Assembly (NCBI GenBank): GCA_000388065.2 | Contig: KB932201.1 | Direction: 5' to 3' (one strand) | DNA length: 46,305 bases | Source of the DNA: Fonticula alba ATCC 38817 | Taxonomy: Eukaryota; Protista; Nucleariida | In this document: piece after piece, positions 3,068 through 44,533 of the stretch | Layout: each line of letters opens with the position of its first letter | Position numbering within the stretch: the first letter of the stretch is position 1 | Translations under genes and position numbers: made by a program | The notes under the pieces: model-generated | Seen by the model: the letters and a program-made list of their open reading frames with translations, nothing else | Database searches by the model: none | What the model was told of the DNA's origin: nothing

Positions 3068-4312
3068 GCAGCCCCGGTCTGTTGTGTGCCCGCCCGCCCG
3101 CGTGCGCGCGCATGCGCCGTGCTGCGTGAGCGCCGGATGAAAGCACCGTGCTCGCATGTGTGTGCTGCCCTCCCCCGCCACTTCTCATCGCGCTCGCCCG
3201 ACGACACGCGCCGCATGTGTGGCACCATCCGTCGTCAGAGACATCCCATATACATGAGCGCGTCCGTGCGCGCGCCCCCCGTCCGTGTTCCCCCTCCCGG
3301 ATATGGTGTGTGTGCGCATGCGTCCCCACAAAATATATACTGATGGCACTCGACACTACCCCCCCCCCGCACGCGCTCCGCCGCACCTGTGTGTCTCTCC
3401 CCTTCCCTCCTTCTGTGGAGGTGTCTGCCTCGCTGTTCTTGTTTCGGAGCATGTGGCCGATGTGGCCTTCGGATCGCGGGTGCTGGTGTTGAGCATGTCA
3501 CTCTTCCAGAATGCACACACTGCACCTCGCGAGGCCGAGATCGTGCCGCCCATCGGCCATGCTCGATCTGGAGAACGCGCGGTCTGAGCACACGGGGGGA
3601 GGGGCGGTGGGCGTCGTCTCGCGAGTTCCGCGCGTATGCACGCGCATTAGCCGCCGCTGCCCGGCGAGATCCGGTGCCTGCACTTGCGCGCGTGTCCCGC
3701 CTGGTGGCCCTGTGTGCCCTCTCCTCCCCAGCCCCCCCTTCCTGCCTTGTGAGGCCCCAGCCTTCCCCCTTCCTGTCCTTGTTCCTCGCCCTTTGTACCA
3801 TATTCCGCCTGATCTGCCGCTGCTGTGTACCACCCCTCCTGTGTGTGTGCGTGTGTGTCTGCGCATGCGCGTCGCAGTCGGTGTTCCTGGATGCGCGCCT
3901 GGTGTGTGTCCCCCTCTCTTCCCCCGATGATGAAATACAGCATCCTCTCTTCCGCGCTCCTCCTTGCTGCGTCCATCGTGGGGCATCCCACCTCCTGCCC
4001 GGGGGGGGGGGGTTGGGCGAAATTCGCCTGGCATGTCGAATGGGACACCGCCTGCACCCCCCCCCCTGCCGCCCTTCTTTCGGCAGAGTGGATGCCTGTC
4101 GCAGTGTGTTCCTGCAGGCCGGTCTCTCTCTCGGTCCGGCACTTGTGCTATGGATGCGGGGTCTATTGTACTTTTATTTGGAAGGGGAAAGTTCCACCGC
4201 GTGCCTGCATATGGTGGGAACACAAAAAGGAAGGGAGCCGCCTCTGGGCGCGTGCAATCCCTCGCACTGGTGCACGGCCTGTGCGAGGGCACACACACAC
4301 ACACACACTCGA

Positions 4313-7300
4313 TCACTTCTTCTCAGAGCGCCTGGAAAGTGAGCGGAACATCCCGCTGATGGATCGCCTGCTGGAGGAGGTGGAGGCCGTGCTCGGGGTG
4401 GGTGACGGGGCACGGTCGACACTCGGCGAGGATGGCGCATCCTGCGAAGCGCCCGGCAGGGTCAGCAACTCGGTGGCCGGGGCAGCGGCAGCAGGCGCCG
4501 GAGCGGTGGTCAAGGTCGCCGAGGACTGGCCCGGTGTCGCGGTCGCGGCAGGCGCCTGCTCCGTGGTTGGGGCCGGGACAGGCGCAGGCTCCTCAGCCGG
4601 GGGATCGGGCAGCTCAATGCGGATGGTGGGGCTAGCCACGAAGGGGGAGGAGGGTGCAGGGGCGGCGGCGGCGGCGACGGCCGGCGGAGCCGTCGTCTCA
4701 TCGGCGTCGATCACCAGCCGGAAGCTGCCCGACGCGGCGAAGGCCGTCTGGTCGGCCGCCGGGGCCGTCGCAGCAGCGGGGACCGGGGCGGCCACCGCCG
4801 GCACCGGCGGGAGCTGGTCACCGGCGTTCAGGACCGGCAGGTCCACGCTGAGCGGTGACCGAGCCATCGGCGGCGGGCTTGACGGCAGGGTCAGGCTGTC
4901 GCCATTGCTAGCCACTCGCATGGTGGCCCGGCGAGAAAGACTCCCGGCGATGGGGGAACTGGAGGAGGCTTCCACCTCGGCCAGTGGGGCCAGGGCCGCC
5001 TCCATGAGCTTGGAGATGTCGAACGGGGCGGCCGAAGGGGCCAGCTGCCGGGCAGGAGCAGGCCCGGGCATGGGAGCCGGCTCCGGCATCTCGGCCGGCT
5101 CGTCGTCCGGCTCGGCGACAATGGCCGCCGGGGCCTCAGCCACCGGGGCCACACACGTCACACCCCGCAGGAAGGTGGACATCGGCCGATCGGCCAGCGG
5201 CTCGAGGCTGATGTTGAGGACGAGACGCGGCGCATGGCCCGGGGCCGGGCGCCGGGAGGGGTCCGACAAAGACACACCGCCGAAGGGCAAATTCGTCGGG
5301 CGCAGGCGGACCGTGCGAGTGCCAGGCAGCAGATTGGCCACACAGATGGTAAATTCACCAAGTGTATCGGACGGGGCCGGGGCCGTGGCCGTGGCATTGT
5401 CGCTGTTGTTGCTGCTGCCGGTGCTGGTACTGCTGGACGCGGATGTCCCATGGACCGTGAACCGGAGGAGACTGTTCTCCGGCGCGACGGCCAGCGTCTC
5501 GAAAGACTGGTCAGCCCACTGTAGCCGGCGGGGAGCGAGTGGATGGGTGGGAGGAGGACGATTGCGCGTCCATGGGGGGGGGGGGGGGGACCAAAGGGGA
5601 GGAGGAGGAGGAACCAGATGGACATTGTACGTTAGAAGTGGCAAGAGGAGCGAGATGGCGGATGTAAATAAGGGCCAGTGGGGGGAGGCGCGCATCAGCA
5701 CCGGCGCACCATGTACGAGCCCAGCAGCCCGATCGAGCTGCCCGGGCTACTCAAGTGGCTGGATGTGTTGAGGCCGGCCATTTCCAGCTGCACGGCCGGG
5801 GCCCAGCGGCTGCTGCGGGATCTGGACCGACGCGCGGCGCGCGCATGCCGCGCAAACCCGTACGCGGCCAGGAGGCGGATGCGGACAACGGTCACGCCGA
5901 CCGGGCGCTCCAGCAGAGCATCCAGCGTCTCCGGCGCCAGAGGCCCAGTTAGGGGAACCTCCGGCCGGTACGCCAGAGGCTTGAGGACATACCCGCAGCC
6001 GCCATTGTCGGCGAACTTGCCCCGGTTCAGGTGGTTCGCCCGGTCCGGCCGCTGGGCATTCAGAGCCACCATCGGCACGCCGGTGGCCCACATGAGCGAC
6101 GGGTCGAAGTTGCTCGAATCGAAGCGCATGCCATCGGGATAGATGCGCGCGAAGCGATGCTGCGCGAAGCTGAACAGCAGGGGGAAGGAGAAGCGCGCCA
6201 TCTTGAAGGCCTTCTTTTCCGGGATGGACACCATCTCATAGCAGCGGCTGCCATCGCGCGCCTGCGTCAGTGAAGGGAAGTGAGAGGCCTTGGTGTAGAC
6301 CACGATGTCGCTAATCTCCCGGGAGGCCTTGTCAGTGGGCTGCGTCGGCTGCCCGCGCGACTCGTGTGCCTTGTTCTTGATGATGATCTTCCCACGCAGC
6401 TCTTCCGGCGAGGGGAGCTCCGCGGGGTTCTTCTCCCAGAAGCCAGCTATCAGGCACGCGACGCATTTTGTCAGTCTTGGCGGAGGAGGAAGAGGGGGGG
6501 AGGAGGAGGGGGAGGTGTGGCGAGGCGTGCGTGACGGATTGACGAGGGAAGGTCGAAGGAAAAAAAAGGAGCAGGGGAGAGGATTCACTTCTCTCCACCG
6601 CGCCCAACGCACTCGTGAAGTCCACCATCGAATCGCCGAACACCTCGCGGCAATACTTGACGAAGGTGCGCTGCTGCGAGTGGCCCAGATGGTTCTCCAG
6701 ACTCAAGATCAGGGGATAGTCCGTGGTTACGAAAGCCGACCGGGCGATCTCCTCCAGGACCAGACGTGCACGAATGCGTGACGTCAGGGTGTAGCCATGG
6801 TAGATGAGCGGCTCACCGCGCGGGCCTTCCCACAGATCCAGCTCGATACAGCGACAGCCGGAGATAAGCGACTTGCGGTAAGCCTCAGTGGTACTGTTGG
6901 ACTGATGGCCGGGGCAGTAGCAGCAGCAGTGGCAGCAGCAGCAGCAGCGGGGACAGCGACAGGAGTATGTGTAAGTACGCGCACGTGTGCATGCGGCTAT
7001 GGCAAGAGCGACGCAGGGCGAGGAGACATATAGGTGCATGCGCAAATCACAGCATACCTTCAGCTGATCGCCCTCCAGGTAGGTATTGTGCGAGGAATCG
7101 ATAAAGTAGTGTGACAGGGGCCGGGTCATGTCCTGGTAAACGGTGGTCGCGTGAACCGGGTTCATGATGGTGCTCTGACGACCAAGCAGAAGGTTGGCGA
7201 AGCTACGCGAGCATGGCAGGAGGAAGAGGAGGTAGGGAGAAAGGGAGGGAAAGGCGGGAAGTGCACGCCACTCCGGTTAGCATGCATGCTGACAGATGGG

Positions 7301-10300
7301 GACAGAGAAAGAGGGGGGCGAGGGAAAGGAGAAGAGAGACTAGGAGCCCCCCCTCCCCCCTCCCCCCCCCCCACTTGCCAATGGCAAGGTAACATACCCG
7401 AAGATGGTCAATAGGCCGTCGGCCGTGGTGGCACAGAATCGGCCGAATACGCGCTCGGCCGGAGTCCAGGTGCGCTCGCCATCCTGCAGCATATCGTCCT
7501 GGTCACTGCCAATACGAACCGGGTCGAAAGACCCATCGGCCGGCTGGTTCTTCTTCGACCGACCGGGCCAGCGCAGGGAAGAGCCCCGGCTTTCGGCCGG
7601 AGCACCGCCAGCAGCATTGGCACCACCCCGTGGCTTGGCCACCGACAGGGACCGCGACAGCGGCTCACCGCTGTGAACCCGCGCCGCGCGCCGGGCATTG
7701 ACCTCATTAACCTCATACAGCCAGAGAAGCACGGCGTCGATGTCCGCCGGCAGGGGCAGCTTCGTGTCCAGACCAAGCGACCGACTGAGTGCCTGCTCGG
7801 TATTGGCGGAGGCGGACGCGGCGGCCTGAGTGGTGCTCGGTCCCGAGGGCGCCTGGAAGATGGCAGGCGACCCGCCGCCAAGGGCCGTCAGGCCAACGGC
7901 CTGCTGCTCGCGGGCCAGGAAATTCCGCAGCTCCACAATGGTCATGGACTCGCTCTGCGGACAGGCCCGAGCATACCTCAAGAAGAGCGCGTAAATGGGC
8001 CCAAGCGCCGGACAGTAGAGAGCCTCCACCACGCGCAAGAACGCCTCAAAGTCCATGGTGACCGTGTTGGCAGCCACCGCCGCCGGAGCAGCAGTCACCA
8101 GGCTACGCAGATCCCGCCGCCGGTAGAGGGCCGCCTGCACGGAAGCCGCATCCGGCCCGGCCACCGCCGGCAATAGGCGTGCCACCAGCATGCAGAGTTC
8201 ATCACCATCGCGCGGGGGCTCGCGGCCACGCACGGTCTCCGCATCCCAGTAGGTTCGCAGGGCGGCCACTGTGGCCGGGCCCAGGCGCAGGGTTTCCGAC
8301 ACGAGGGTCTCGTCGCCGGTGGCATCGAAGATGGACACGGAGTCTTGCATCGACGAGACGGTCGAGATGGAGGAGATGGCCGACGCCGCGTCGTCGAAGT
8401 CCTCCTCCCCTGCCGGGGTTGCCGACGTCTCGCTGTCAAGGATCTTGAGTGCGACGTCGAAGATTTCCGGCACATGGAACTTGGTCCGCGAGCTGACAGC
8501 TACATATGATGCGCGCATCAGTCACATGTGCAGGGGCAGGAGCGACACCATTAGAACACGCGCCCGAGGGAGACAGCAGGGCGAGGGGGCAAAGCAAGTT
8601 GTCAGGGCCGAGGGCCGAGGGCCGAGGGCCAGGCCACTTATCCGCCTTGAAGGCACGCACCACCAGAGACACCGAGCTCCGAGGCGGCAACCACCACGCG
8701 GGCCAGGTCGCCCTCGGCTTCGGCACGGGCCAGCGTACGCTTGACCGCGGCCAAATCCTCATCCTGGGCATTCCCGGCAGCCGGAGCAGAGGCCCCAGCC
8801 GAGGCGGCAGCTGGGGAGGTGGGCTGCTTGTTGGAAGAGGGTCAGATAACCATACGAGAGGGCAAGCGGACCGGAAAGCCGCGGGGGGAGGAAACAGGAA
8901 AGACGCACCACCGCGCCTCCGGCCGGGGAAGTGGGACCGGACTCGCGGGCGGCCAATTCACCAAGCTGATTCAGATGCCAGCGTGTGGACTGGGCAATTT
9001 GCTCGAAGACCAACAGGCGACGGCGCCCATCGAGGTACTCCTCGGCACCGGCGTACGTCAAGTCGCTGGGGATGGACTCCGGCTGCTCCTTAACCTGTGG
9101 CGTCAGAGGAGGGCACAGTACGTGTGTGTATGTGTGTATGCGTGAAGGGAGGAGAGGAGGAGTTAGCAATGGGTCGTGCAAGTTGTGCAAGTCACGCACA
9201 TGGTGGTATGGAGCAAAGGAAAGCAGGCACGCAGGCCAGCAAGTGACGGACCTTCTCGAAGTTGATGAAATCCGCGGGCAGAGGCTGGCCATCGGGCGGA
9301 GGCGGGGAGGGCAGCGAATCGCCCCCTTGCTGGTAGGCCTCCACCAGCCCGCGAATGGTGGGGAACTTGCCAGAGACGGAGGCCGTGGCGGCCGGGTCGC
9401 CCGACTGCAGGCCGTACAGACGCCCCGTGGGTGAGGATTCGTCGTTGCTCGTGGTGATGGGCGCAATCCAATAGCCCGCAGGAACTTGCTTGGTGAAGGT
9501 CCGGCAGATGAGCTGGTACCCGTGCGAGTCGTCGTCGCGATCCCGGAAGACGAAGAACACCCGCGGGGTGTCGGCCGTGTCGGCAGCCGCCGGCGCCGTC
9601 GTCGAGGAGGGAGAGGTGGCCGAATTCTGGCCCCAATGCTTCAGCAGCAGGACCGCCTCGGCCCGGCTAAGGGGGACCTCATGCAGGAGCCAGGGGGCAT
9701 CCTGGTCGGGAACCACATCGCCGGCGATGGCCAGCGATGGCATGCCATCCTCTGCAGCCGCGGCCACCGTGGCCGCGACCTCGGTTGGGGCTTCGTGCGA
9801 TGCCGAGTGTCAGGGCAAGAGGACGATAAAAGGGCGAATGCACCGAGCATGAGCATGTGCGAGCAGAGATCCACGCGTACAAAGAGTTTCCCCGGCCGAG
9901 AGAAGCGCGGCCACGGCATTCAGCACGTTCTCCGAGGCACCCTCCAGAACCGAGGGCAAGGGCCGGTCAGTGGGAAGTTTGTGCTTCGGAGTCGGGGGCA
10001 TAGGCTCATCCAGGTCCGGGCCACCATCGAGGTACTCCAGGTTGTCATAGACTGTGTGTTGCCGGCGCGCAGGTGAGGGAGCGATGTCAATGGTGCCGCC
10101 AAAGGGAAAGGGAGATGGGGAGGGGAGACGGGGAGGGGGGAGAGGGAAACAGCAGGTGCAGCAAGGCGCGGGGCATGGGATGGGGAGATGGTCAAATCGC
10201 GGCAGATGCCAAGATGGCTGCGGTATACGCACTGTCATAGCCGAAGGAGGCTCGCAGGTCACGAAGACACCACACCCGGCGCTTGTAGTAGATGACACGC

Positions 10301-11267
10301 CCGTCTCGGGTGCAGGGCTGCCGGCAAACACTGCAGGCCAGGCAGCCTCGGTGGAAGGGAAGCAGGCCATGACGGCGGTCGTGCAGACTCAGCACATCCG
10401 GGTCATCCAGCGAGATGGGGGCCATGCAAGCAGCACAAGAGGAGGAAGTACAGGCAACACAGGTGGGCTGGCTGTGGAAGATCGAGCGAGCACCGTACGA
10501 GGGAAATGGTGACAATGGGATGCAGCAAACAGCAAAAGCAGACCACGGGCTCCGGGGATTAGTGGAACGACAAAGATGCGGTTCCCGACAGCGAGGGAAG
10601 GGGGGGGGGGGGAAAGGGCAGAAGGAAAGGAGCAGACGGGGAAGAGGAGAGGAAACATACCCGCGAGCGACCATGACCCGCTCACCGGAGTCGAAGAGCT
10701 TCCGGCAGCGGTAGCACCGGAAGCAGTCGGCATGGAAGTTAGCCGGCTTCCCGGCGCTGGAATCATCGGCGCCGACGTCGGAGCTGTGGGCATTCTCGGC
10801 CACGGAGTCCGGCGACCCCGGGGTCGCTCGAGCCAGCTTGGTGATGTCCACCGTCACAATCGACCCGGTGGTCACAAGGGCCCCGCAGGCGGAGCACCGT
10901 GTGCCGTGGTGCTCGAAAAAGTGGTCCCGACACAGGAGGGCCGGCTCGTCATCGGACATCGAAGCCATGGGATCCGGACTGTCGAGGTAGATGCCGGTGG
11001 TGGAGATGTCCAAGTGGCAAATGGAGCACACAACGCATGCCAAGTGGTACAGGTGCTTGCCCACGCGCAGGGCCCGCTCATTGCTGATGGCGAGCTCGCA
11101 CCCCGGGCAGATGGGGTCGGCTGCATGTGGGAGGTGAGGGTGAGGGCAGATAGGCAGGGGCAGAGGGGGAGGGGCCGGGGCATGGCAGAGGGGAATCGGC
11201 TGGCAAGCGGGAGACAGGGGGGGGGGGGGGGGGAGAGGAGAAAGGGCGTACAGCTGTCGGACGGCAT
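4313..11267 (-). CDS. Phosphoinositide-specific phospholipase C with N-terminal 3xLIM and SH2-like domains; 12 exons, 1751 aa predicted
   Basis: Exons in transcript order: 11252-11267, 10661-11120, 10233-10471, 9881-10051, 9252-9790, 8909-9094, 8661-8826, 7398-8499, 7058-7202, 6613-6901, 5710-6446, 4313-5518 (5256 nt). All are GT-AG with matching phases. X box: SSHNTYL, CRCIELDLWEG, IYHGYTLT, LSLENH, PSPEELRGKIIIKNK. Y box: ARIYPDGMRFDSSNF, VALNAQ, DNGGCGYVLKP. A C2 domain follows. PLC identity is certain; the N-terminal fusion is inferred from splicing. Confidence 0.85.
9325..9695 (-). other. SH2-like domain (exon 5 of the PLC model)
   Basis: PWLLHEVPLSRAEAVLLLK...RVFFVFRDRD...YQLIC...YWIAPI...LYGL...KFPTIRGLVEAYQ follows the SH2 pattern W..hsR.eAe.lL...FlvR.s...y.Ls...hy.I...y.l...F.sl.eLv.yY. 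Recognised by eye, not by HMM. Confidence 0.7.
10233..11111 (-). other. Three tandem LIM zinc-finger domains (exons 2-3 of the PLC model)
   Basis: Three C-x2-C...H-x2-C-x2-C-x2-C...C-x2-(H/C/D) arrays: CPGC..HLACVVCSIC..CRDH; CSAC..HADCFRCYRC..CVAC; CAAC..HRGCLACSVC..CLRD. Confidence 0.93.
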
Positions 11268-11551
11268 GGTGAAGAGAGGAGGGAGGGTTGCTCACGTGCG
11301 GGGGACACCGGCAGCGGGCGGCCAGCACATGAAGAGGCCTGTGCTCTTTCAGGCCAGGCACCAAGTCGGGAGCAGAGGAGTGAGGGGGGGTGTGGTGGGT
11401 GGACTGGGGGAGGGGGGGGTGATCCAGAGTAGTGCAGAGTGGGAAGGAGAGGAGGGAGTCGCAGAAGAAGGGTGGAGCTTCCAGTGTGAACACTGGCCAC
11501 ACCCACACCGCAGTGGCACTTAAGCCCGATGTGTGTGTGAGTTGGGGCGGG

Positions 11552-11767
11552 NNNNNNNNNNNNNNNNNNNNNNNNNNNNNNNNNNNNNNNNNNNNNNNNN
11601 NNNNNNNNNNNNNNNNNNNNNNNNNNNNNNNNNNNNNNNNNNNNNNNNNNNNNNNNNNNNNNNNNNNNNNNNNNNNNNNNNNNNNNNNNNNNNNNNNNNN
11701 NNNNNNNNNNNNNNNNNNNNNNNNNNNNNNNNNNNNNNNNNNNNNNNNNNNNNNNNNNNNNNNNNNN
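11552..11767. other. Assembly gap (N); further gaps at 25877-25961, 29315-30009, 31837-31887 and 43966-44196
   Basis: Runs of N, mostly flanked by G/C homopolymers or (GT)n. Confidence 1.
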
Positions 11768-22980: not shown

Positions 22981-25900
22981 TCACAGACGGCGCTTCGACG
23001 CCTCCACAGCAGACAGACGGCGCTGGACTTCGGTCGTGCGCTTGTCCACCCACTGCAGGGTGTCCAGATGGTTGTTCAGGATGTCCAGAATGACGCTCAG
23101 GGAGTTGGCGCGACTGGCAACGGCCTGCCCGACGCCGGCGGCCCCGGAGGTGGCGGAGGCGGCCGCCGAAACCGGCGACGCCGCGTCGATGCCGGACGAC
23201 TGATCCTGGAACTGGTTAACGTCGGATACCAGGTCCTCGAGGCGCAGCTCCATCGAATCCAACTGGGAATTGAGCTTCTCCGCCAAGCTCAGACTGGGTT
23301 TGCGAGGGGAGAAGTTAGAAGCCGACTCGGGACACGGCATGGGGCGGAGACGGGGGGGGGGAGAAAGAAAGAGATGCAAGGGGGGTGCAACGCACTAGTT
23401 CAAGCGCTGCGCATCGGCTGAGGTGGTGTCGCCGGCCTGCTTCAGCATGATGGTGACCTCGGACTCCAGGGCATCGATGGCGCGCTCAAGATCGGTCTGC
23501 TGAGTGGTGATGTACTCGATGTTGCTCTACGACGAATGGGGAGGGGGGGGGGGATTAGCCATGGAGGAGGGGGAAGGGGCACAGGGAGGGCAGCAGGCAC
23601 GTAGCATGGCGGCAGGAGGAGTGGAAACGGATTCGGACGCACAGAAATCTCCTTCTGGAGGCGGTTGGTCAAGGCCACCTCATCGTGCAGAGCCAAAAGA
23701 CGGCTCTCATTGGCCAGAATGGACGCATCGCGGTCCGCCGCGCGAGAGGCCAGCTTCCGGAAAGTACCGACATATGAGTCCAGGTCGGTGGCCCACTCGG
23801 TCAGCAGCTCCTCGACGGTCTGCCAGGGGATGGAAGAAAGAAAGGGGGACAGCCATGGCGGGGATCTTAGTAACGGCCCGCAAGCATCAGCGACAGAGGC
23901 ACCGAGTGTGGTGGGGAAAAGGTGCGCACCTTGCAGGACATCCCGCGAGCGATGGCGCTCGAGTCCAGGGAAAGATCCTTCTCCGGGGCAGCACCCAGAG
24001 CCGAGGCGCTGAGGCCTTGCCCAGGGGCAGACTGGTCGGCAGCCGTCTTGCTGGAGTCCCCTCCCGGAGCCGGGGTAGTGGTGGCAGAAGCGCCGAAACC
24101 GCCGGTCGCGGGCTTGCCATCACCGGTTGCCGCCGGGGTAGTGGTGGTGCCGGTGGTGGTGATCGTGGTGGTGGGCTTGCCGCCCTCCGAGGGGCCGGCC
24201 GTGTCGGTGGTGGTGGTGGTGGTGCCGGTGCCGGTGCCGGTGCCGGTGCCGGTGGCAGTGGTGCTCGAAGATGACCCGCCAAAGCTGGGCATGGTGAATC
24301 CCGAGGTGATGCCGGCCGGAGCGGCCGCCCCAGTGCCAGCAGTGGCAGTCGGAGCTGCGGCGGTGGTGCCGGCGGTGCCGGTGGTCGTGCCGCTGGTGGC
24401 CTTGTTATTGAAGGAGAAAGCGCCAGCCGGCGTGGCCGGGGCACCGCCAGCCGAGTCGGCTGCCGGAGTGGAAGGAGCCCCCGCCACGATGCCAGCACCA
24501 AATCCGAAACCAGTTGAACCGGTCGGCTTGGTCTTCTTGGGCGAGGCATCACCAGTGGCCGTGGTGCTGGTGCTGGTGGTGGTGGTGGTGGTGGCAGGAT
24601 TGAAGCCGAATCCACCCGTGGCCGGCTTGGCAGTCTCGGTGGCGGTGCTCGAGGAGGTCATGCCAAACGTGGGCATGGTGAAACCCGAAGATGCAGCCGG
24701 CTTGGCTTCGGCAGTGGCGGCAGGAGCGGCGGCGGTCGTCGCGGCAGAAGTCGGACCGAAGGAGAAGCCCCCCGGGGCAGGAGCAGCGGTGGCAGGCTTG
24801 GCGTCAGCGGCGGCAGTGGTGGCCGGGGTGCTGCCAAAGCCGAAGTTAAAGCCAGAGGACGCGGGCTTGGTCTCAGTGGCACCGGTGGCGGTGGTGCCCG
24901 TCGCCGATGACGTCGTCGTCGCCGCTGAGGTGCTGCCGAAACTTGTGTCACCGAATTTGAAGGAGGGCGCAGCGGTGCCAGCAGTCGGCTTGGCATCGGC
25001 CGTCGGGGCGGTGGTGGTGGTGGTGCTCGGAGCAGCAGATGTCGAGCCGAAGCCACCTGCGCCAAAGCCGGAGGTGGTACTGGCACTGCCGAAACCGGTG
25101 GGCTTGGTGGCGGAATCGGTGGCCGCGGTGGGGGCCGAGGCAGGGGCTCCGAAGGTGGGCATGGTGAATCCCGTGGTAGCTGGCTTGTTGTCGGTAGTAG
25201 CACTGGTACCGAAGCCGCCAGTGGTACCGGTGCCGAAACCGGAGGCCGGAGTGGCAGCGGTGGAAGCTGTGGCTCCAAAACCGCCTGTGGCCGGGGTCGC
25301 GCCAGTGCCGAAGCTGATGGAAGCCGGAGCGGCAGCGGGGGCAGCTGTGCCAAAGCCACCGGCAGCCGGGGTGCTGGCGCCGGTGCCAAAGCCACCCGCA
25401 GCAGGGGCCGCAGCAGGAGCAGCGGCAGCAGCGCCAAAGCCGCCAGTGGCCGGGGCAGCGGCGCCAAAGCCGCCTGTACCCGTGGCGGAGGCACCGAATC
25501 CGGTGGTGCCTGAGCCGAAGCCGCCACCAGTGGCCGGAGCAGCGGCGGCACCACCGAAGCCGGCGGAGCCGAAGCCCCCAGCGGCCGGGGTAGCACCGCT
25601 GCCGAAGCCGGTGGCGCCGGAGCCGCCACTAGCGGGAGTCGCCCCGAAGCTGGTGGAGCCAAAGCCACCAGTGGCAGGAGCCGCGCCAAAGCCAGTGCCA
25701 GTGGTGCCAGTAGCTGCGGTGCCAAATCCACCTGATCCGAAAGTGCTGGTCCCGAAGCTAGTTCCACCGAAGCCAGTGGAGCCGGGGGTGCCGCTGGCGG
25801 CCTGGCCGCCAGGCTGCATGTTGGGGGAGAAGCTGAAACCTGCGAGGAAAGGGGCAAGAGGTGAGGAAGGGGGGGGNNNNNNNNNNNNNNNNNNNNNNNN

Positions 25901-26024
25901 NNNNNNNNNNNNNNNNNNNNNNNNNNNNNNNNNNNNNNNNNNNNNNNNNNNNNNNNNNNNNGGGGGCAAGAAAGAGGAGGACAAGCAGAGGCGTCGCACC
26001 GGTGCCAGCCGGCTGGTTGCTCAT
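22981..26024 (-). CDS. NUP62: FG-repeat nucleoporin NUP62/NSP1, 5 exons, 851 aa predicted
   Basis: Exons 26000-26024, 23930-25839, 23643-23819, 23396-23526, 22981-23293. Long FG-repeat region (GFG, FSFG, FKFG, FTMPTFG), then an Nsp1-type coiled coil: TVEELLTEWATDL, NIEYITTQQTDLE, LAEKLNSQLDSME, ILNNHLDTLQWVD. Confidence 0.93.
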
Positions 26025-28580: not shown

Positions 28581-30009
28581 GCAGGAGCTTGCGTGAATGG
28601 ATGAACTGCCTTTTTTTTTCCCCCCTTCACTTCGCCATCCCCTTTTCCTCCGCGCCTCCTCTTCGGGAGAGAAGAAAATAAGAAGCACCGCCCGCGCACC
28701 GCGTGCCGCGCGCGCGCGGCTTGTGCCCGATATGTGTATCATAATACCAACCCCGCCCTTGTGTGAGATCACCCCTCGACATCGTCCTTTTTTTTTTCCC
28801 CCATGTCTCCCTTTCTCCTCCCGGATGATAGGTGCCCAAGCTGACGTAGGGCGGGGGGTGGTCAATCGAGCTGGCGAAAGAGTCGACAAGGCGACGGCTG
28901 GGGCTCTTTTGGAGGCTGTGGCGACGTGCGGCGGAAACCAGCGAAATCGCCTCCGGCCCAAGAGCAGACGGGCATGAGGGAGGTGTGATCCAAATATCAC
29001 GGACCTCCCGGATCACCCGGATGAAACATCGTTGGCACTGGGGCCTCTTCCCGGGGCGGAGCGAATAAACGCGCGCACACACACCCACCCATCGGCCCGG
29101 GGCACGCCACACCGTCAGACCCCAGGATGTGTCTAGAATATTGTGGACTAGATCAGCATGTACGTGGATATGCTTGACCGGTAGACCAGAATGACATTGT
29201 CCATCCGCCCACAGCCGGCCGCGAAGGGGGGGCCCTTGGGCTGTGGCGGCCCGGCCCTCAACCATACCGGGGACGGGGGGGGGGGGGGGGAGGAGACCAT
29301 GTTGCAACCGAAAANNNNNNNNNNNNNNNNNNNNNNNNNNNNNNNNNNNNNNNNNNNNNNNNNNNNNNNNNNNNNNNNNNNNNNNNNNNNNNNNNNNNNN
29401 NNNNNNNNNNNNNNNNNNNNNNNNNNNNNNNNNNNNNNNNNNNNNNNNNNNNNNNNNNNNNNNNNNNNNNNNNNNNNNNNNNNNNNNNNNNNNNNNNNNN
29501 NNNNNNNNNNNNNNNNNNNNNNNNNNNNNNNNNNNNNNNNNNNNNNNNNNNNNNNNNNNNNNNNNNNNNNNNNNNNNNNNNNNNNNNNNNNNNNNNNNNN
29601 NNNNNNNNNNNNNNNNNNNNNNNNNNNNNNNNNNNNNNNNNNNNNNNNNNNNNNNNNNNNNNNNNNNNNNNNNNNNNNNNNNNNNNNNNNNNNNNNNNNN
29701 NNNNNNNNNNNNNNNNNNNNNNNNNNNNNNNNNNNNNNNNNNNNNNNNNNNNNNNNNNNNNNNNNNNNNNNNNNNNNNNNNNNNNNNNNNNNNNNNNNNN
29801 NNNNNNNNNNNNNNNNNNNNNNNNNNNNNNNNNNNNNNNNNNNNNNNNNNNNNNNNNNNNNNNNNNNNNNNNNNNNNNNNNNNNNNNNNNNNNNNNNNNN
29901 NNNNNNNNNNNNNNNNNNNNNNNNNNNNNNNNNNNNNNNNNNNNNNNNNNNNNNNNNNNNNNNNNNNNNNNNNNNNNNNNNNNNNNNNNNNNNNNNNNNN
30001 NNNNNNNNN

Positions 30010-31763: not shown

Positions 31764-32938
31764 GTGTGTGCGTGGACGGGTGCCCCGGCGCCGGCGCTCG
31801 CACTCCTCCGGCCCATGGGCGCGTCGCTTTTCGTGCNNNNNNNNNNNNNNNNNNNNNNNNNNNNNNNNNNNNNNNNNNNNNNNNNNNGGCGCCTCGGGCG
31901 CTGGTCGTCATTGTTTGATGATGGGCTTTTCTGCCATCTTTTGAACACCTTTTGGGTGTTCCCGCCCCCCGGCCCCCGCCCCCGCGCCGGCTCCCCCTCC
32001 CTCCTGCCGCCCCTGCTGCCAGGGGGGGCAGTTTCCCCGGGGCGGGGCATTTTTCTGGAAGGTGCTATTTTTCTTCCAGAAAGTCCGTTGATACGGCTGC
32101 GCGAACAAGCCCCCCTCCCCCCTCCGGGGGGGGGGGGGGATGGGTGTCCCCCGACCGTGTCGTCTCTGAGCGGCGGAGGACATTGTGGGTGCGCACTCAC
32201 GCGCGCACATTGGCGCTGCGCCCCCATTTGGTGCTGTGCCATGTTTGTCTGAGTCTCTCGTTGGCTCCTCCGCCAAGCGGCCGGCAACGCCCTGAGTGGT
32301 GCGGGGGTGGGCCACGCGCTGTCTGCGCCTCGGGGGCTGTGGATTGAGGGGCCCCCCCCCCCCCCCCGGGGGAGGGGGGCGGATTACTCGGATCCCCGCC
32401 TTTTCGCGAATCCTCCTCCGGTCTGTGTGGCAATGCGGCGGTACCGACGCACAGGACCTGTTGCTGGGGGCACTCCCGTCGCAGAGTCTGTGCCAGGGCG
32501 CTCTCACCCTCGGGGCCCGTCTAGCATGTTCGAGCTCAGTTGGGAGCCCTGCGCGCCAGCTGCGGTCCTCTTGTCTCGTGCCTGCCCCAGGGAGCCGGCG
32601 GCCGGGGGAGGAGCGGACCGGGCACGCCTTGCTGCGGGCTGCCCCATGGCTCTTGTCTGGTGGATTGTCGAGTGCGAGGCCGTGCCCCGGTGCCAGGAGA
32701 GCCTGCCGGCCTGCGTATCCCGCGCGCCCCGCGGCCGCGGCCGCGGCCGCCCTCCCGCCTCGACACTCATGCGCATCACGGAGGTTGTCGTCTCCCGGGG
32801 CGGGGCGGATGGTGTGAGGCGGGTGTCGACCGTGTGCCGGGGCGCCTTCCGCCCGGTCCCCTCCTCTCCCCTCCGAGCGAGAGGGAGGCTTGGGGGTGGC
32901 GGGCGGCCTGCCCGGCCGGTGGGCACCCTCCGCAGGGG

Positions 32939-41908: not shown

Positions 41909-44533
41909 TTAGTCCTGGGCCTCGGTGAGCTTGTTCATGTTCGGCACGATGTGGGTGCGGAAGTAGTCCAGGGCCTTGCTCTGCACCTCAAGGTTGTGGC
42001 GGGCGGTCAGGACATGGATCATCTCGGCACGGAGGCGCACGCAGTCCAGAGCCTGGTTGTAGTAGCCGATGGCACGGCTGATGTCCTCAGGGTTGCCGGA
42101 GGTCGAGGAAGAGTAGTGCTGCGCGAGCAGGAGCATGGCCATGTCGTTGCGCGGGTCCAGCTCGAGGGCCTTCTCCAGGAGACCGACGACGGTGGCGCGG
42201 TCCTCGGCCGGGAAAGCACCAACATCAGGCTGGCCACCGTTGCTGTTGGCACTGGCGGTGATGAAGCGGCTGAAGATGAGGTTGGCCTCGGCGATGTAGA
42301 ACAGCGGGAAGTCCTTGAAGCGCTTCTGGCCTGCGGAGGGAGAAGGCAGCGAGGAGGGTCAGCAATCATACGTCAGGTGTGGGACAGGAGAGAGGGGAGA
42401 GAGAGAGAGAGAAAGAGGGGGGGGGGGAGCAATGAGGCGACAGCAGCGCGGAATCCCAAATGCGTACCCTCCCGGAGGAACTTCTCAGCCTCATCGAAGC
42501 GCTGCATGTTGGCAAGGCTCTCCACGAAGTGGAAGACCAGGTCCGGAACGTGGGGGAACTTGGCCTGGACAGACTCGAACTGATTCTGCAGGGAGATGAT
42601 CTCATCCATGCTGCTGGCCATAGCCTGCATGGCGGTGAAGCGCTGGAGGTAGGCCACGTAGGAGGCCTCGCCCTTGGCGATGATCATGTCGAAGTCCTCG
42701 AGAGCCTTGTCCAGGGAGTTGCGCAGGAGGTTCAGCTGGGCCGTGTGCAGGTAGAGATCCGAGTCGGTGGGATCCAGCTGCTTGCCCTTGTCCAGGTCGA
42801 GGAAGGCCACATCGTGGCCGTCGATCTCCGAGTTGATGGAGGCACGGCGGATGTAGGCGCTGGAGGTGGGCTCCAGCTCGATGGAGCGGTCGATGTCGGC
42901 CAGGGCCTCCGGGGCCAGGCCGGCCAGGAAGTAGAAGGTACCACGCAGGTTGTAGGCCTTGCCCAGGTGCTGGGTGTTGTTGGCGATGGCCAGGTGGATG
43001 GTGTCGAAGCTCTCATCATACTCGCCCTGGTGCAGCAGGTGGATGGCCGTGCGGAAGAGGTGGTCGCCATCGGTGGAGTCGGCCGAGGCGGGCTCCTCGC
43101 CGTCGGCAAGGGTGGGGTAGGTGGCGTAGATGTTGTTGTGGAAGCTGTCCAGGTAGTTGCGCACGGTGAAGTAGGAGGGGACCCGGGCCTTGCGAGAGGC
43201 GATGATGTCATCGACCTCGGAGGCGGCCATGCGCTGGCAGAGGGCCTCACACTGCTGGATGATGCTGTCCATGTTGGCGGGCTCCATGTGCGAGAGGATC
43301 AGGCAGTCGACGGCGGCCAGGTTGAACTTCTTCAGCTCGGTGTAGGCGGTCATGCGGCGACGCAGAGCGCGGATGTACAGAGGGCTGAGAGTGAGAGCTG
43401 GGTAGGTGGCAGCCAAGGGACGGAGTCGAAGGGAGGAGTTAGCCAGCGAGCCGGGGAGGGGGGGGGGGGGGGGCGGGGGGAGTCTACACACACGCATACA
43501 CGCGAAGCAGAGTAGGGCGGAGGGATGATTGAGGGAGCGCACCCATGGAGGTATCAGCGACACACTGCTCCAGGTCACCGAGGTAGAAATGGGAGGTGCC
43601 ACGGTTGTGGTAGAGGAAGGACAGGGTCTTCTCCGAGGCGTCGGGGGACTCGATGCCGGAGGTGTAGAAGGCAATGGCATCAGCATACTTGCCAGCCTTG
43701 AAGGCGGCGTTGCCCTTGACACGGAAGCCATCGGAGACGGTTTGCGAGCTGGCGCTGGCGTCGGTAGCCTTGGAGCTCTTGACCTGGTGGGGTGAATGAA
43801 AGTGGGGGCAAGGGTGTAAGCAAAGAGGGTGGGGGGGGGGGGAGGGCGGCCAGTTGGTTGGCTGGGGAGGGAAATGGCCGGTTGCGCGCACCTTGGCAAC
43901 AAGCTCGTCGGTCTTGACACCGTTCTCAGTGGTGCGGGCTGCTCGGATGGGGGAGGGGGGGGGGGNNNNNNNNNNNNNNNNNNNNNNNNNNNNNNNNNNN
44001 NNNNNNNNNNNNNNNNNNNNNNNNNNNNNNNNNNNNNNNNNNNNNNNNNNNNNNNNNNNNNNNNNNNNNNNNNNNNNNNNNNNNNNNNNNNNNNNNNNNN
44101 NNNNNNNNNNNNNNNNNNNNNNNNNNNNNNNNNNNNNNNNNNNNNNNNNNNNNNNNNNNNNNNNNNNNNNNNNNNNNNNNNNNNNNNNNNNNNNNNGGGG
44201 GGGGGGCGACAGAAACATACCGGAGCTGGCAGTCATGGGAGGAGTGTTGAGCTTCTCGGAAGCGATGCGGCGGCGAGAGTTGTTCAGCCAGAAGGTCGTC
44301 CCGATGATGGCAGCGATAGAGGCCAGAATGCCACCAGTGAGCAGGGGGTTGGCGCGGATCCAGTGGACCAGACGATCGAGGATCATGCTCGACTGATCAA
44401 CAACCTTGGTGACGAAGCTGGACACCGAGGTGGTGGTGGCCACGGTGCCGGCAGCGCCAGCGGTGGCCAGAGCAGCCGCGGTGGCCGGGGTGACGTTAGG
44501 AGGGAGGGAGGTGAAGGTGGGATTGGCAGACAT
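41909..44533 (-). CDS. TOM70: Mitochondrial import receptor TOM70, 5 exons, 651 aa predicted (intron 1 spans an N gap)
   Basis: Exons 44221-44533, 43892-43941, 43543-43783, 42468-43397, 41909-42330. N-terminal TM segment (LLTGGILASIAAIIGTTFWL) followed by basic residues; clamp TPR FRVKGNAAFKAGKYADAIAFYT, YHNR; AYNLRGTFYFL, YIRRAS, ALEDF. Confidence 0.9.

What the first reader, a model, noticed from the sequence alone, without database searches (positions are those of the whole stretch)
4313..11267. Candidate new PLC class: one gene joining 3xLIM, SH2, EF-hand-like, PLC X/Y and C2 domains
Seen in sequence: the LIM ORF appears to stop at 10192, but a GTGCGT donor at 10232 precedes that stop. 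It splices in phase (GAC A|TC TAT) to exon 9881-10051. That exon joins the SH2 exon via GTACGC...GAAG (phase 1), and the chain continues in frame to the PLC catalytic core. All 11 junctions have matching phases and donors typical of this locus; total 1751 aa. Catalytic residues equivalent to PLC-delta1 H311/N312/E341/D343/H356/E390/K438/K440/S522/R549/Y551 are all present. Established: the only SH2-bearing PLCs I know (PLC-gamma) carry SH2s inside the X-Y linker, and I know of no PLC with LIM domains. Inference: an enzyme that couples LIM-mediated recruitment to actin or adhesion sites and a phospho-ligand input to PIP2 hydrolysis, built independently of PLC-gamma.
Basis: partly seen in the sequence, partly recalled or inferred. 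Interest (0 to 1): 0.92.

Follow-up and report, generated by a model that had tools for sequence, protein, structure and literature searches.

The report
LIM-SH2 phospholipase C of Fonticula
This is a real, expressed gene of the amoeba Fonticula alba for a phospholipase C with three LIM domains and an SH2-like domain in front of an intact catalytic core; the layout is shared with Capsaspora, sits unremarked in public databases, and I found no paper describing it.

Summary
Confirmed. The 12-exon minus-strand model (11267 to 4313) holds. Assembled RNA contigs show all 11 GT..AG junctions, including 10051/10233, 9790/9881 and 9094/9252. One 4852-nt contig runs from the end of exon 2 (second LIM domain) to the last exon.

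The product is 1750 aa, not 1751. It is identical to the public protein H696_00232 of Fonticula alba, so the model is not new.

Domains:
- Three complete LIM zinc-ligand sets.
- PI-PLC X and Y domains, with all 11 PLC-delta1 catalytic residues kept.
- A divergent EF-hand-like region and a divergent C2.
- An SH2 that Pfam misses. It is supported by collinearity with orthologues whose SH2 reaches or nearly reaches Pfam's threshold, a weak targeted profile hit, and an AlphaFold model (pLDDT 78) that matches only SH2 structures.

The same LIMx3-SH2-EF-X-Y-C2 layout occurs in Capsaspora owczarzaki, in one transcriptome, and on two metagenome contigs. Capsaspora also has a paralogue with CH-SH2-HR1-C1 ahead of the core. 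The catalytic cores form their own clade (100/100), apart from the gamma and delta/eta/zeta groups.

Independence from PLC-gamma is likely from domain position but not proven (AU p 0.34). The LIM and SH2 functions are inference; Fonticula is reported to have no tyrosine kinases. I found no paper describing this class.

The parts
4313..11267 (-). Whole coding region of Fonticula alba H696_00232. It has 12 exons: 11252-11267, 10661-11120, 10233-10471, 9881-10051, 9252-9790, 8909-9094, 8661-8823, 7398-8499, 7058-7202, 6613-6901, 5710-6446 and 4313-5518. The product is 1750 aa plus a TGA stop.
   Evidence: All 11 junctions are seen in RNA contigs. The spliced translation has a single terminal stop and is identical to P0001, which is H696_00232.
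10921..11109 (-). LIM1 (aa 10-72). Ligand pattern C-x2-C...H-x2-C-x2-C-x2-C...C-x2-H, with a long insert in the second finger.
   Evidence: Pfam LIM. Ligand pattern search. Ligands invariant in the alignment with Capsaspora and P0003.
10450..10896 (-). LIM2 (aa 81-166). It carries a roughly 30-residue insert in the first finger and is interrupted by intron 2 (10472-10660).
10258..10437 (-). LIM3 (aa 171-230).
10052..10232 (-). Intron 3 (181 nt, GTGCGT...CAG). It holds the stop at 10192 that appears to end the LIM ORF.
   Evidence: Joint 10051/10233 is present in all four runs, and depth inside the intron is about 1.
9321..9701 (-). Divergent SH2 domain (aa 326-452). It has a roughly 19-residue low-complexity insert between helix A and strand B. 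Arg338 (alphaA) and Arg378 (FLVR position) are kept. The betaD His is not.
   Evidence: Pfam and PDB sequence searches found nothing. ESM features point to SH2 at 0.86. An SH2 profile gives 12.2 bits in 3 colinear pieces, E 8e-6 for one target. Alignment A3. AF2 pLDDT 78 / pTM 0.71. The top 50 Foldseek PDB hits are all SH2.
9035..9037 (-). Tyr495 in the motif AEEYLDG. An acidic-Tyr motif sits about 40 residues after the SH2 in Fonticula (about 30 in the orthologues) and is conserved in all five LIM-SH2 PLCs. It is a candidate regulatory phosphosite; that role is inferred.
   Evidence: E493/E494/Y495 are invariant in A1. The Tyr is invariant in A4. Motifs are listed.
7130..8041 (-). EF-hand-like region (aa ~745-983). 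A roughly 155-residue Fonticula-specific insert lies between the two conserved halves. Intron 8 lies within it.
   Evidence: A profile of PLC EF-hand-like domains gives 22.2 bits in two colinear pieces, against 57 bits in the orthologues. Colinear BLASTP HSP 6-791 vs 2-603 of the Capsaspora protein, E 4e-29.
6370..7129 (-). PI-PLC X domain (aa 984-1129), interrupted by introns 9 and 10. It holds H997, N998, E1027, D1029, H1042, E1076, K1127 and K1129.
   Evidence: Pfam PF00388, 176.6 bits. Residue mapping to 1djg_A.
5977..6312 (-). PI-PLC Y domain (aa 1149-1260). It holds S1177, R1204 and Y1206. The X-Y linker is only about 20 residues.
   Evidence: Pfam PF00387, 115.8 bits..
5291..5904 (-). 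Divergent C2 domain (aa ~1285-1425) with a Ser/Thr-rich insert. It is interrupted by intron 11.
   Evidence: No Pfam hit. A C2 profile built from orthologues and delta/eta PLCs gives 33.8 bits, E 2e-12 for one target.
4316..5218 (-). Ala/Pro/Ser-rich C-terminal tail of about 300 residues with no recognisable domain.
   Evidence: Composition A 21%, P 17%, S 12%. No Pfam hit.

Best explanation
Shown:
- Window 4313-11267 (minus strand) is one expressed 12-exon gene of Fonticula alba, H696_00232.
- Its 1750-aa product reads, in order: three LIM zinc fingers, a divergent SH2 domain, a conserved acidic-tyrosine motif and helical linker, an EF-hand-like region, a PI-PLC X/Y barrel with a short X-Y linker, a C2 domain, and a long Ala/Pro-rich tail.
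- All residues that bind calcium and PIP2 and carry out catalysis in PLC-delta1 are present.
- The protein belongs to a small conserved clade of opisthokont PLCs with an SH2 domain ahead of the EF hands. The clade has a LIMx3-SH2 form in Fonticula, Capsaspora and three uncultured or unidentified eukaryotes. A paralogue with CH-SH2-HR1-C1 ahead of the core occurs in Capsaspora.
- This clade is separate from the delta/eta/zeta and gamma groups.

Inferred:
- The enzyme most likely cleaves PI(4,5)P2 to IP3 and diacylglycerol.
- It has no PH domain. Membrane or complex targeting would therefore come from protein contacts of the LIM and SH2 modules, plus the C2.
- The conserved [ED][ED]Y motif next to the SH2 could act as a phospho-switch, either an intramolecular latch or a docking site, by analogy with the Tyr783-cSH2 contact in PLC-gamma.
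- In Fonticula, which is reported to lack conventional tyrosine kinases, the writer would have to be a dual-specificity kinase. Otherwise the SH2 has a non-phosphotyrosine or structural role.
For: - RNA contigs show every junction, and one contig runs from exon 2 to exon 12.
- The spliced ORF is intact and identical to the public protein.
- Pfam finds LIM, X and Y.
- 11 of 11 catalytic residues are kept, by alignment to rat PLC-delta1 1djg_A.
- Three complete LIM ligand sets.
- SH2 evidence: a colinear alignment with orthologues whose SH2 reaches Pfam's cut-off (24.2 bits in Capsaspora and in the L003 ORF, 21.0 in P0003); a targeted profile hit; an AF2 model with pLDDT 78 whose best 50 PDB matches are all SH2.
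- C2 and EF-like profiles hit.
- Orthologues occur as uninterrupted ORFs in a transcript (L001/L002) and in genomic DNA (L004).
- The catalytic-core clade has 100/100 support and 99 SH2-aLRT-style support (SH-aLRT) in the larger quick tree.
- The acidic-Tyr motif is conserved in all five LIM-SH2 proteins.
Against: - No enzyme activity, localisation or binding has been tested for any member.
- The Fonticula SH2 fails Pfam and PDB sequence searches.
- The first AF2 model, from 6 sequences, was poor (pLDDT 42).
- The good model used an alignment made of SH2 domains, which leans towards that fold.
- The betaD histidine is missing.
- The FLVR arginine is replaced in two clade members: Gln in the L003 ORF and Pro in the Capsaspora CH-SH2 paralogue. 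Phosphotyrosine binding is therefore not a fixed property of the clade.
- Fonticula is reported to have 0 tyrosine kinases, 1 PTP and only 3 SH2 domains (PMC4342544).
- The LIM domains fall in no functional LIM class.
- Two clade members (P0007, P0005) appear to lack the LIM-SH2 part.
- The RNA evidence is assembled contigs, not reads, so minor isoforms such as retention of intron 3, which would give a LIM-only protein, cannot be excluded.
Confidence: 0.8

Rival explanations
1. The fusion is a gene-model artefact. Two neighbouring genes, a LIM-only gene ending at 10192 and a PLC gene starting downstream, were joined by read-through or by the annotator.
For: The LIM ORF has an in-frame stop at 10192 in the genome. 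Contigs across two genes do not by themselves prove one transcript, as the caveat says.
Against: Intron 3 is spliced out in all four runs with canonical GT..AG ends and correct phase. The spliced frame stays open for 1750 codons. Capsaspora, a transcript contig and a metagenome contig all encode the same order of domains in single uninterrupted ORFs. The N-terminal 790 residues align colinearly with the Capsaspora protein at E 4e-29.
Confidence: 0.03
2. The gene is real, but in Fonticula the SH2-like segment is a degenerate relic. It no longer reads phosphotyrosine and serves as a structural spacer or binds some other ligand. The enzyme then behaves as a delta/zeta-like, calcium-driven PLC with a LIM scaffold.
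For: The segment is below detection for Pfam and PDB sequence searches. It has large low-complexity inserts and lacks the betaD His. The FLVR Arg is already lost in two clade members. Fonticula has no tyrosine kinases and one PTP (PMC4342544). Spt6-type SH2 domains, which bind phosphoserine and phosphothreonine, are among the structural matches.
Against: Both phosphate-binding arginines (R338, R378) are kept in Fonticula. The neighbouring acidic-Tyr motif is conserved from Fonticula to Capsaspora. From my own knowledge, not tested here: Dictyostelium also lacks conventional tyrosine kinases yet uses SH2-phosphotyrosine signalling through dual-specificity kinases.
Confidence: 0.35
3. The clade is an offshoot or sister of PLC-gamma, so SH2-PLC coupling arose once. 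In this reading the N-terminal SH2 is a relocated gamma SH2, not an independent acquisition.
For: The AU test does not reject a tree that holds the N-terminal-SH2 clade and the gamma clade together (p 0.338). The backbone of the PLC tree is weakly resolved.
Against: The SH2 sits before the EF hands, not inside the X-Y linker, and the linker is about 20 residues. There is no split PH, second SH2 or SH3. In the free trees gamma groups elsewhere. The Capsaspora orthologue's SH2 is closest in sequence to RasGAP, GRB2 and VAV SH2 domains, and no PLC-gamma chain is among the best 60 PDB hits.
Confidence: 0.15

Closest known systems
PLC-delta / PLC-zeta / PLC-eta type PI-PLCs (for example rat PLC-delta1, PDB 1DJG/1DJX)
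   Same: Both have the EF-hand-like, X, short X-Y linker, Y and C2 order. All 11 active-site and substrate-binding residues are identical. The delta1 chains are the second-best PDB match to residues 975-1270 (235 bits), just behind PLC-beta3 (240 bits). Outside the clade, most high-scoring hits to the Capsaspora orthologue's core are delta, eta and zeta types.
   Different: It has no N-terminal PH domain; LIMx3 and SH2 take its place. The catalytic core falls outside the delta/eta/zeta/PLCL group, in its own 100/100 clade. It has large low-complexity inserts and a 300-residue tail.
PLC-gamma
   Same: Both are PI-PLCs that carry an SH2 domain. Both have a tyrosine next to an SH2 that could act as a phospho-switch. 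For this clade that role is inference.
   Different: Gamma has PH-EF-X-[split PH, nSH2, cSH2, SH3]-Y-C2, with the SH2s inside the X-Y linker. Here a single SH2 lies N-terminal to the EF hands and the linker is about 20 residues. The catalytic clade is separate, although a sister relationship is not rejected.
Capsaspora owczarzaki 'phospholipase C' XP_004348382.2 / A0A0D2VPS8 (P0155)
   Same: It is the orthologue, with LIMx3-SH2-acidic Tyr-helical linker-EF-X-Y-C2 in the same order. The N-terminal HSP is colinear at E 4e-29. The catalytic region is 47% identical. It is in the same clade.
   Different: It is more compact (1426 aa), without Fonticula's inserts. Its SH2 and C2 pass Pfam thresholds. 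It lives in an organism reported to have 103 tyrosine-kinase domains (PMC4342544).
Capsaspora 'PLCH2 protein' XP_004364930.2 (P0153/P0006)
   Same: It branches first within the same catalytic clade, and it also has an SH2 ahead of the EF hands.
   Different: Its N-terminal modules are CH, SH2, HR1 and C1 instead of three LIMs. The FLVR arginine is replaced by Pro.

Membership tests
Eukaryotic PI-PLC (EC 3.1.4.11) | PI-PLC X and Y halves of the catalytic TIM barrel | tested here: met
   PF00388 at 176.6 bits and PF00387 at 115.8 bits on P0001.
Eukaryotic PI-PLC (EC 3.1.4.11) | Catalytic, calcium-binding and substrate-binding residues (rat delta1 H311, N312, E341, D343, H356, E390, K438, K440, S522, R549, Y551) | tested here: met
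   All 11 are identical: H997, N998, E1027, D1029, H1042, E1076, K1127, K1129, S1177, R1204, Y1206.
Eukaryotic PI-PLC (EC 3.1.4.11) | PIP2 hydrolysis activity | not testable with these tools
   Needs an enzyme assay.
Eukaryotic PI-PLC core (EF-X-Y-C2) | EF-hand-like domain before X and C2 after Y | tested here: met
   There are no Pfam hits in Fonticula. Targeted profiles hit colinearly: EF-like 22.2 bits and C2 33.8 bits. The orthologues hit strongly.
PLC-delta | N-terminal PH domain | tested here: not met
   No PH family hit on P0001 or on the exon pieces. The N-terminus is LIMx3-SH2.
PLC-gamma | Split PH, nSH2, cSH2 and SH3 array inserted between X and Y | tested here: not met
   X ends at residue 1129 and Y starts at 1149. 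The gamma-type proteins in the same search show SH2x2+SH3 between X and Y.
LIM domain | Two zinc fingers with eight ligands, C-x2-C...H-x2-C-x2-C-x2-C...C-x2-(C/H/D) | tested here: met
   Three complete ligand sets at aa 10-72, 81-166 and 171-230. Pfam LIM at 60.7 bits with 3 stretches. The ligands are invariant against the orthologues.
SH2 domain | Sequence match to the SH2 family at a curated threshold | tested here: not met
   No Pfam or PDB sequence hit for the Fonticula segment even at E 10. An in-house SH2 profile gives only 12.2 bits. The aligned orthologue segments score 24.2, 24.2, 21.0 and 20.7 bits against a cut-off of 21.
SH2 domain | SH2 fold (alphaA, central beta sheet, alphaB) | tested here: inconclusive
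   The AF2 model from the 38-sequence SH2 alignment has pLDDT 78 and pTM 0.71, with the expected order of elements. The top 50 Foldseek PDB hits are all SH2, with TM by target of 0.5-0.72. However, the alignment consisted of SH2 domains, and the 6-sequence model was poor.
SH2 domain | Phosphotyrosine-binding residues (alphaA Arg, betaB5 FLVR Arg, betaD His) | tested here: inconclusive
   R338 and R378 align with the two arginines. The betaD His column holds Gly/Tyr. Binding itself was not tested.
N-terminal-SH2 PLC clade (LIM-SH2 PLC), defined here | Colinear LIMx3-SH2-[ED][ED]Y-helical linker-EF-X-Y-C2, and a catalytic core inside the clade | tested here: met
   for collinearity. for the clade (100/100), and 99/95 for the subclade that holds the LIM forms.

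The most novel reading that the evidence does not exclude
The LIM-SH2 PLCs and their CH-SH2-HR1-C1 paralogue are survivors of an ancestral opisthokont PLC class. In that class a single N-terminal SH2 and an adjacent acidic-tyrosine switch gate PIP2 hydrolysis, assembled independently of PLC-gamma. The class is retained in tyrosine-kinase-less Fonticula. If so, SH2-controlled phosphoinositide and calcium signalling predates the holozoan tyrosine-kinase expansion and was lost in animals and fungi.
Probability: 0.3. Interest if true: 0.7.

Novelty: new variant of a known kind. Interest (0 to 1): 0.5.

Why it matters
PLC classes are defined by their regulatory modules, and the textbook list (beta, gamma, delta, epsilon, zeta, eta) comes from animals. 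This is a further, conserved way of wiring the same catalytic core. The PH domain is replaced by protein-interaction modules: LIMx3 or CH/HR1/C1, plus one SH2.

The clade occurs in Fonticula, which is on the fungal side of the opisthokonts, and in Capsaspora, which is on the animal side. It therefore likely dates to the opisthokont ancestor.

It bears on how SH2 'reader' domains were used before, or without, dedicated tyrosine kinases. It also offers a tractable test system, because genome editing has been reported in Capsaspora (paper listed; I did not read it).

The practical novelty is limited. The sequences and their automatic domain hits are already public. What is new is recognising them as a family, the conserved tyrosine motif, and the hidden SH2 in the Fonticula protein.

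Tried and rejected
- Pfam at E up to 10 on single exons found no SH2, EF or C2.
- phmmer of the SH2 exon against PDB found nothing.
- The first AlphaFold job, on a 6-sequence alignment, gave pLDDT 41.8 and was discarded.
- A word-indexed search with the N-terminal 660 residues of P0003 found only itself and the Capsaspora orthologue. The profile search with the four-protein alignment A4 was swamped by LIM word matches and added nothing. The taxonomic range of the family is therefore under-sampled.
- BLASTP between P0001 and P0155 did not report the catalytic HSP. I used for that region (47% identity, 427 bits).
- The helical linker after the SH2 was tested for HR1 or other Pfam families. There were no hits in the LIM forms. 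Only the Capsaspora paralogue shows a sub-threshold HR1.
- The LIM class could not be assigned.
- No supplementary files of Suga et al. 2014 are held, so I could not see whether their SH2 tables list these proteins.
- Searches for the accession numbers in papers gave nothing.
- The organisms behind SRR19044629/30 and the two metagenome contigs were not identified.
- The tree contains no proteins known to be beta or epsilon PLCs.

Full report
**What is in the sequence.** The region lies in a GC-rich (about 65%) eukaryotic window with assembly gaps. On the minus strand there is a chain of ORFs. Pfam recognises LIM domains (10195-11139), PI-PLC-X (6335-7165) and PI-PLC-Y (5698-6612) in them.

**Transcript evidence.**
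- Four small 2012 runs hold about 65% of the sampled words of 5400-11300, roughly the share that the exons make up.
- I laid their assembled contigs on 5450-11440. They show eleven joints with CT..AC ends on the + strand, which are GT..AG on the gene's strand.
- The joints are 11120/11252, 10471/10661, 10051/10233, 9790/9881, 9092(+2)/9250, 8823/8909, 8499/8661, 7202/7398, 6901/7058 (in the pieces table), 6446/6613 and 5518/5710.
- One contig (X2 record 3, 4852 nt) is colinear with exon 12 (about 1.19 kb of it), exons 11 to 3, and 93 nt of exon 2. Its piece lengths add up exactly.
- Other contigs (for example X3 record 6) run from exon 7 to 30 nt into exon 1, across the ATG.
- Depth in the bin holding intron 3 is about 1, against 8-12 in exons.
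- Loose ends at 5589, 7347/7372 and 11234 coincide with homopolymer tracts in introns. I read them as assembly chimeras.

**The gene model.**
- Joining the twelve exons gives 5253 nt with a single terminal stop, so 1750 residues.
- All introns start GT(A/G/C)(C/T)G and end AG.
- The ATG at 11267 is preceded by an in-frame TGA at 11294-11292.
- The orthologues begin at the equivalent position.
- A 216-N gap lies 285 nt upstream.

**Identity.** An exhaustive HMMER search with the Y-domain exon returned a 1750-aa protein, 100% identical, with the exon at residues 1105-1349. It equals my spliced translation exactly. It is Fonticula alba H696_00232 (KCV72651.1, XP_009492352.1, UniProt A0A058ZFC0). 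NCBI names it 'hypothetical protein' and UniProt names it 'Phosphoinositide phospholipase C'. The gene model is therefore already public.

**Domains with direct support.**
- LIM: three complete eight-ligand sets at aa 10-72, 81-166 and 171-230. All ligands are conserved against the orthologues.
- Catalytic core: X scores 176.6 bits and Y 115.8 bits.
- Active site: the alignment to rat PLC-delta1 chain 1djg_A (chain index + 132 = native number; H311 lands in SSHNTYL) maps H311, N312, E341, D343, H356, E390, K438, K440, S522, R549 and Y551. They fall on H997, N998, E1027, D1029, H1042, E1076, K1127, K1129, S1177, R1204 and Y1206, all identical.
- X-Y linker: about 20 residues.

**Domains that needed indirect support.**
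- C2: no Pfam hit. A profile from orthologues and delta/eta C2 domains gives 33.8 bits over aa ~1285-1425.
- EF-hand-like region: a PLC EF-like profile gives 22.2 bits in two colinear pieces separated by a roughly 155-residue insert. The orthologues score 57 bits.
- C-terminal tail: the last 300 residues are Ala/Pro/Ser-rich with no domain.

**The SH2.** This is the weakest domain call in Fonticula.
- Pfam and PDB sequence searches find nothing.
- Language-model features point to SH2 clusters at 0.86, which is a lead only.
- The segment lies at exactly the position where the orthologues have an SH2 at or around Pfam's cut-off of 21 bits. Capsaspora scores 24.2, the L003 ORF 24.2, P0003 21.0 and P0156 20.7.
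- An SH2 profile built from those orthologues and PLC-gamma SH2s hits three colinear pieces of Fonticula: helix A, strands B-C with FVFR, and helix B. The total is 12.2 bits, E 8e-6 for a single target.
- In a 38-sequence alignment the two phosphate-binding arginines (R338, R378) are in register. The betaD His is not kept. A 19-residue low-complexity insert follows helix A.
- AlphaFold on that alignment gives pLDDT 78 and pTM 0.71 with the SH2 order of elements. The 50 best Foldseek PDB matches are all SH2 domains.
- Caveat: the alignment was made of SH2 domains, and the earlier shallow job failed.
- My reading is a divergent SH2 fold, very likely. Its ligand is unknown.

**Relatives with the same layout.** Five independent sources share it.
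- Fonticula alba (this gene).
- Capsaspora owczarzaki XP_004348382.2, 1426 aa, with LIMx3, SH2, X, Y and C2 by Pfam.
- P0003/P0152, complete ORFs on transcript contigs of SRR19044629/30.
- P0156, one uninterrupted 1118-aa ORF on a metagenome contig, L004.
- The bioreactor metagenome contig L003. There, LIM ORFs, an SH2 ORF and the PLC ORF P0004 follow one another.

Fonticula residues 6-791 align colinearly with Capsaspora residues 2-603 at E 4e-29. The catalytic regions are 47% identical.

A tyrosine preceded by acidic residues lies about 30-40 residues after the SH2 in all five. The motifs are AEEYLDG, HEEYAST, IEEYISA, LDDYIDQ and ASDYYDY. A conserved helical stretch follows it.

A Capsaspora paralogue (XP_004364930.2) has CH-SH2-HR1-C1 in place of LIMx3-SH2.

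**Phylogeny.**
- On X+Y+C2 (386 columns), the eight proteins form a clade with 100/100 support in a careful 44-row tree and 99 SH-aLRT in a 67-row quick tree. The eight are the five LIM forms, the CH paralogue and two shorter proteins, P0005 and P0007.
- The clade is separate from a gamma-type clade (97/98) and from the delta/eta/zeta/PLCL assemblage.
- P0007's transcripts show no LIM or SH2 upstream of its start, so not every member carries the N-terminal modules.
- The backbone is weak. Holding this clade together with gamma costs 10.4 log-likelihood units and is not rejected (AU p 0.338).
- The Capsaspora SH2 is closest to RasGAP, GRB2 and VAV SH2s, and not to gamma, among PDB chains.
- No proteins known to be beta or epsilon PLCs were in the tree.

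**Literature.**
- Suga et al. 2014 (PMC4342544) report for Fonticula 0 tyrosine kinases, 1 PTP, 3 SH2 domains and 0 PTB. They do not mention a LIM-PLC in the text. Their supplements are not held.
- The LIM-superclass survey that included Capsaspora (PMC3305314) never mentions phospholipase, PLC or SH2.
- Searches combining LIM, SH2, phospholipase C, Capsaspora, Fonticula, opisthokont and the accession numbers found nothing relevant.
- The library does not cover subscription journals, so this absence is not proof.

**How it probably works.**
- Shown: an intact PI-PLC active site in a delta-like core, no PH domain, and three LIMs plus an SH2-fold module at the N-terminus.
- Inferred: the enzyme hydrolyses PI(4,5)P2.
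- Inferred: targeting and regulation come from LIM and SH2 protein contacts and the C2.
- Inferred: the conserved acidic tyrosine beside the SH2 is a phospho-switch or docking site. The comparison with PLC-gamma Tyr783 and its cSH2 rests on my own knowledge, not a test here.
- In kinase-rich Capsaspora this is straightforward. In Fonticula it needs a dual-specificity kinase, or else the SH2 has another role. I put about 35% on the relic or alternative-ligand reading.
- The LIMs match no particular LIM class.

**Verdict.**
- The gene model and its Capsaspora orthologue are already in public databases.
- Independence from gamma and the proposed inputs are not demonstrated.
- I class it as a new variant of a known kind. 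It is a conserved PLC subfamily that I could not find described.
- Interest is moderate.

Noticed in passing
window 10032-10034 and 9035-9037 (minus strand): Fonticula has two copies of EYLDG, at Y245 and Y495, flanking the SH2. Only the second lies in a motif conserved in the orthologues. The first sits in a Fonticula-specific insert between LIM3 and the SH2.
   Followed up: partly
window 11217-11233, 10600-10612, 7362-7372, 5574-5589: Homopolymer runs of 11-17 G/C bases (C on the coding strand at 11217-11233, 10600-10612 and 5574-5589; G at 7362-7372) lie in introns 1, 2, 8 and 11. They coincide with chimeric loose ends and inflated depth in the RNA contigs.
   Followed up: partly
window 4291-4308: An (AC)9 microsatellite, (GT)n on the gene's strand, begins 5 nt after the stop codon, in the 3' UTR.
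   Followed up: no
window 11552-11767, 25877-25961, 29315-30009, 31837-31887, 43966-44196: There are five assembly gaps (runs of N). The first lies 285 nt upstream of the ATG, so the promoter and 5' UTR of this gene cannot be read fully. The apparent GC dip at 29-30 kb is the 695-N gap.
   Followed up: yes
P0153/P0006 (Capsaspora XP_004364930.2): This paralogous PLC has CH, SH2, HR1-like and C1 modules ahead of the EF hands. NCBI names it 'PLCH2 protein', although it is not in the eta group in the tree. Its FLVR arginine is replaced by proline.
   Followed up: partly
P0002 (Rigifila ramosa), P0040 (Clydaea vesicula), P0158 (EukProt PhF_6): Each of these proteins has two X and two Y domain hits in one polypeptide. 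P0002 and P0040 also have two C2 hits; P0158 has one. The Rigifila one is a complete ORF from a transcriptome assembly. I did not check whether these are real tandem PLCs or fused gene models.
   Followed up: no
P0018 (Creolimax), P0021 (Sphaeroforma): These ichthyosporean PLCs have X and Y separated by about 540 and 970 residues, with no SH2 or SH3 detected by Pfam in between. Yet they group inside the gamma-type clade in the careful tree.
   Followed up: no
L005 (SRR24111721) 1-730: P0007 is a member of the same catalytic clade. Its transcript has an AT-rich, ORF-poor 5' region and starts at the EF region. At least one relative therefore lacks the LIM-SH2 part, or the contig is incomplete.
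   Followed up: partly
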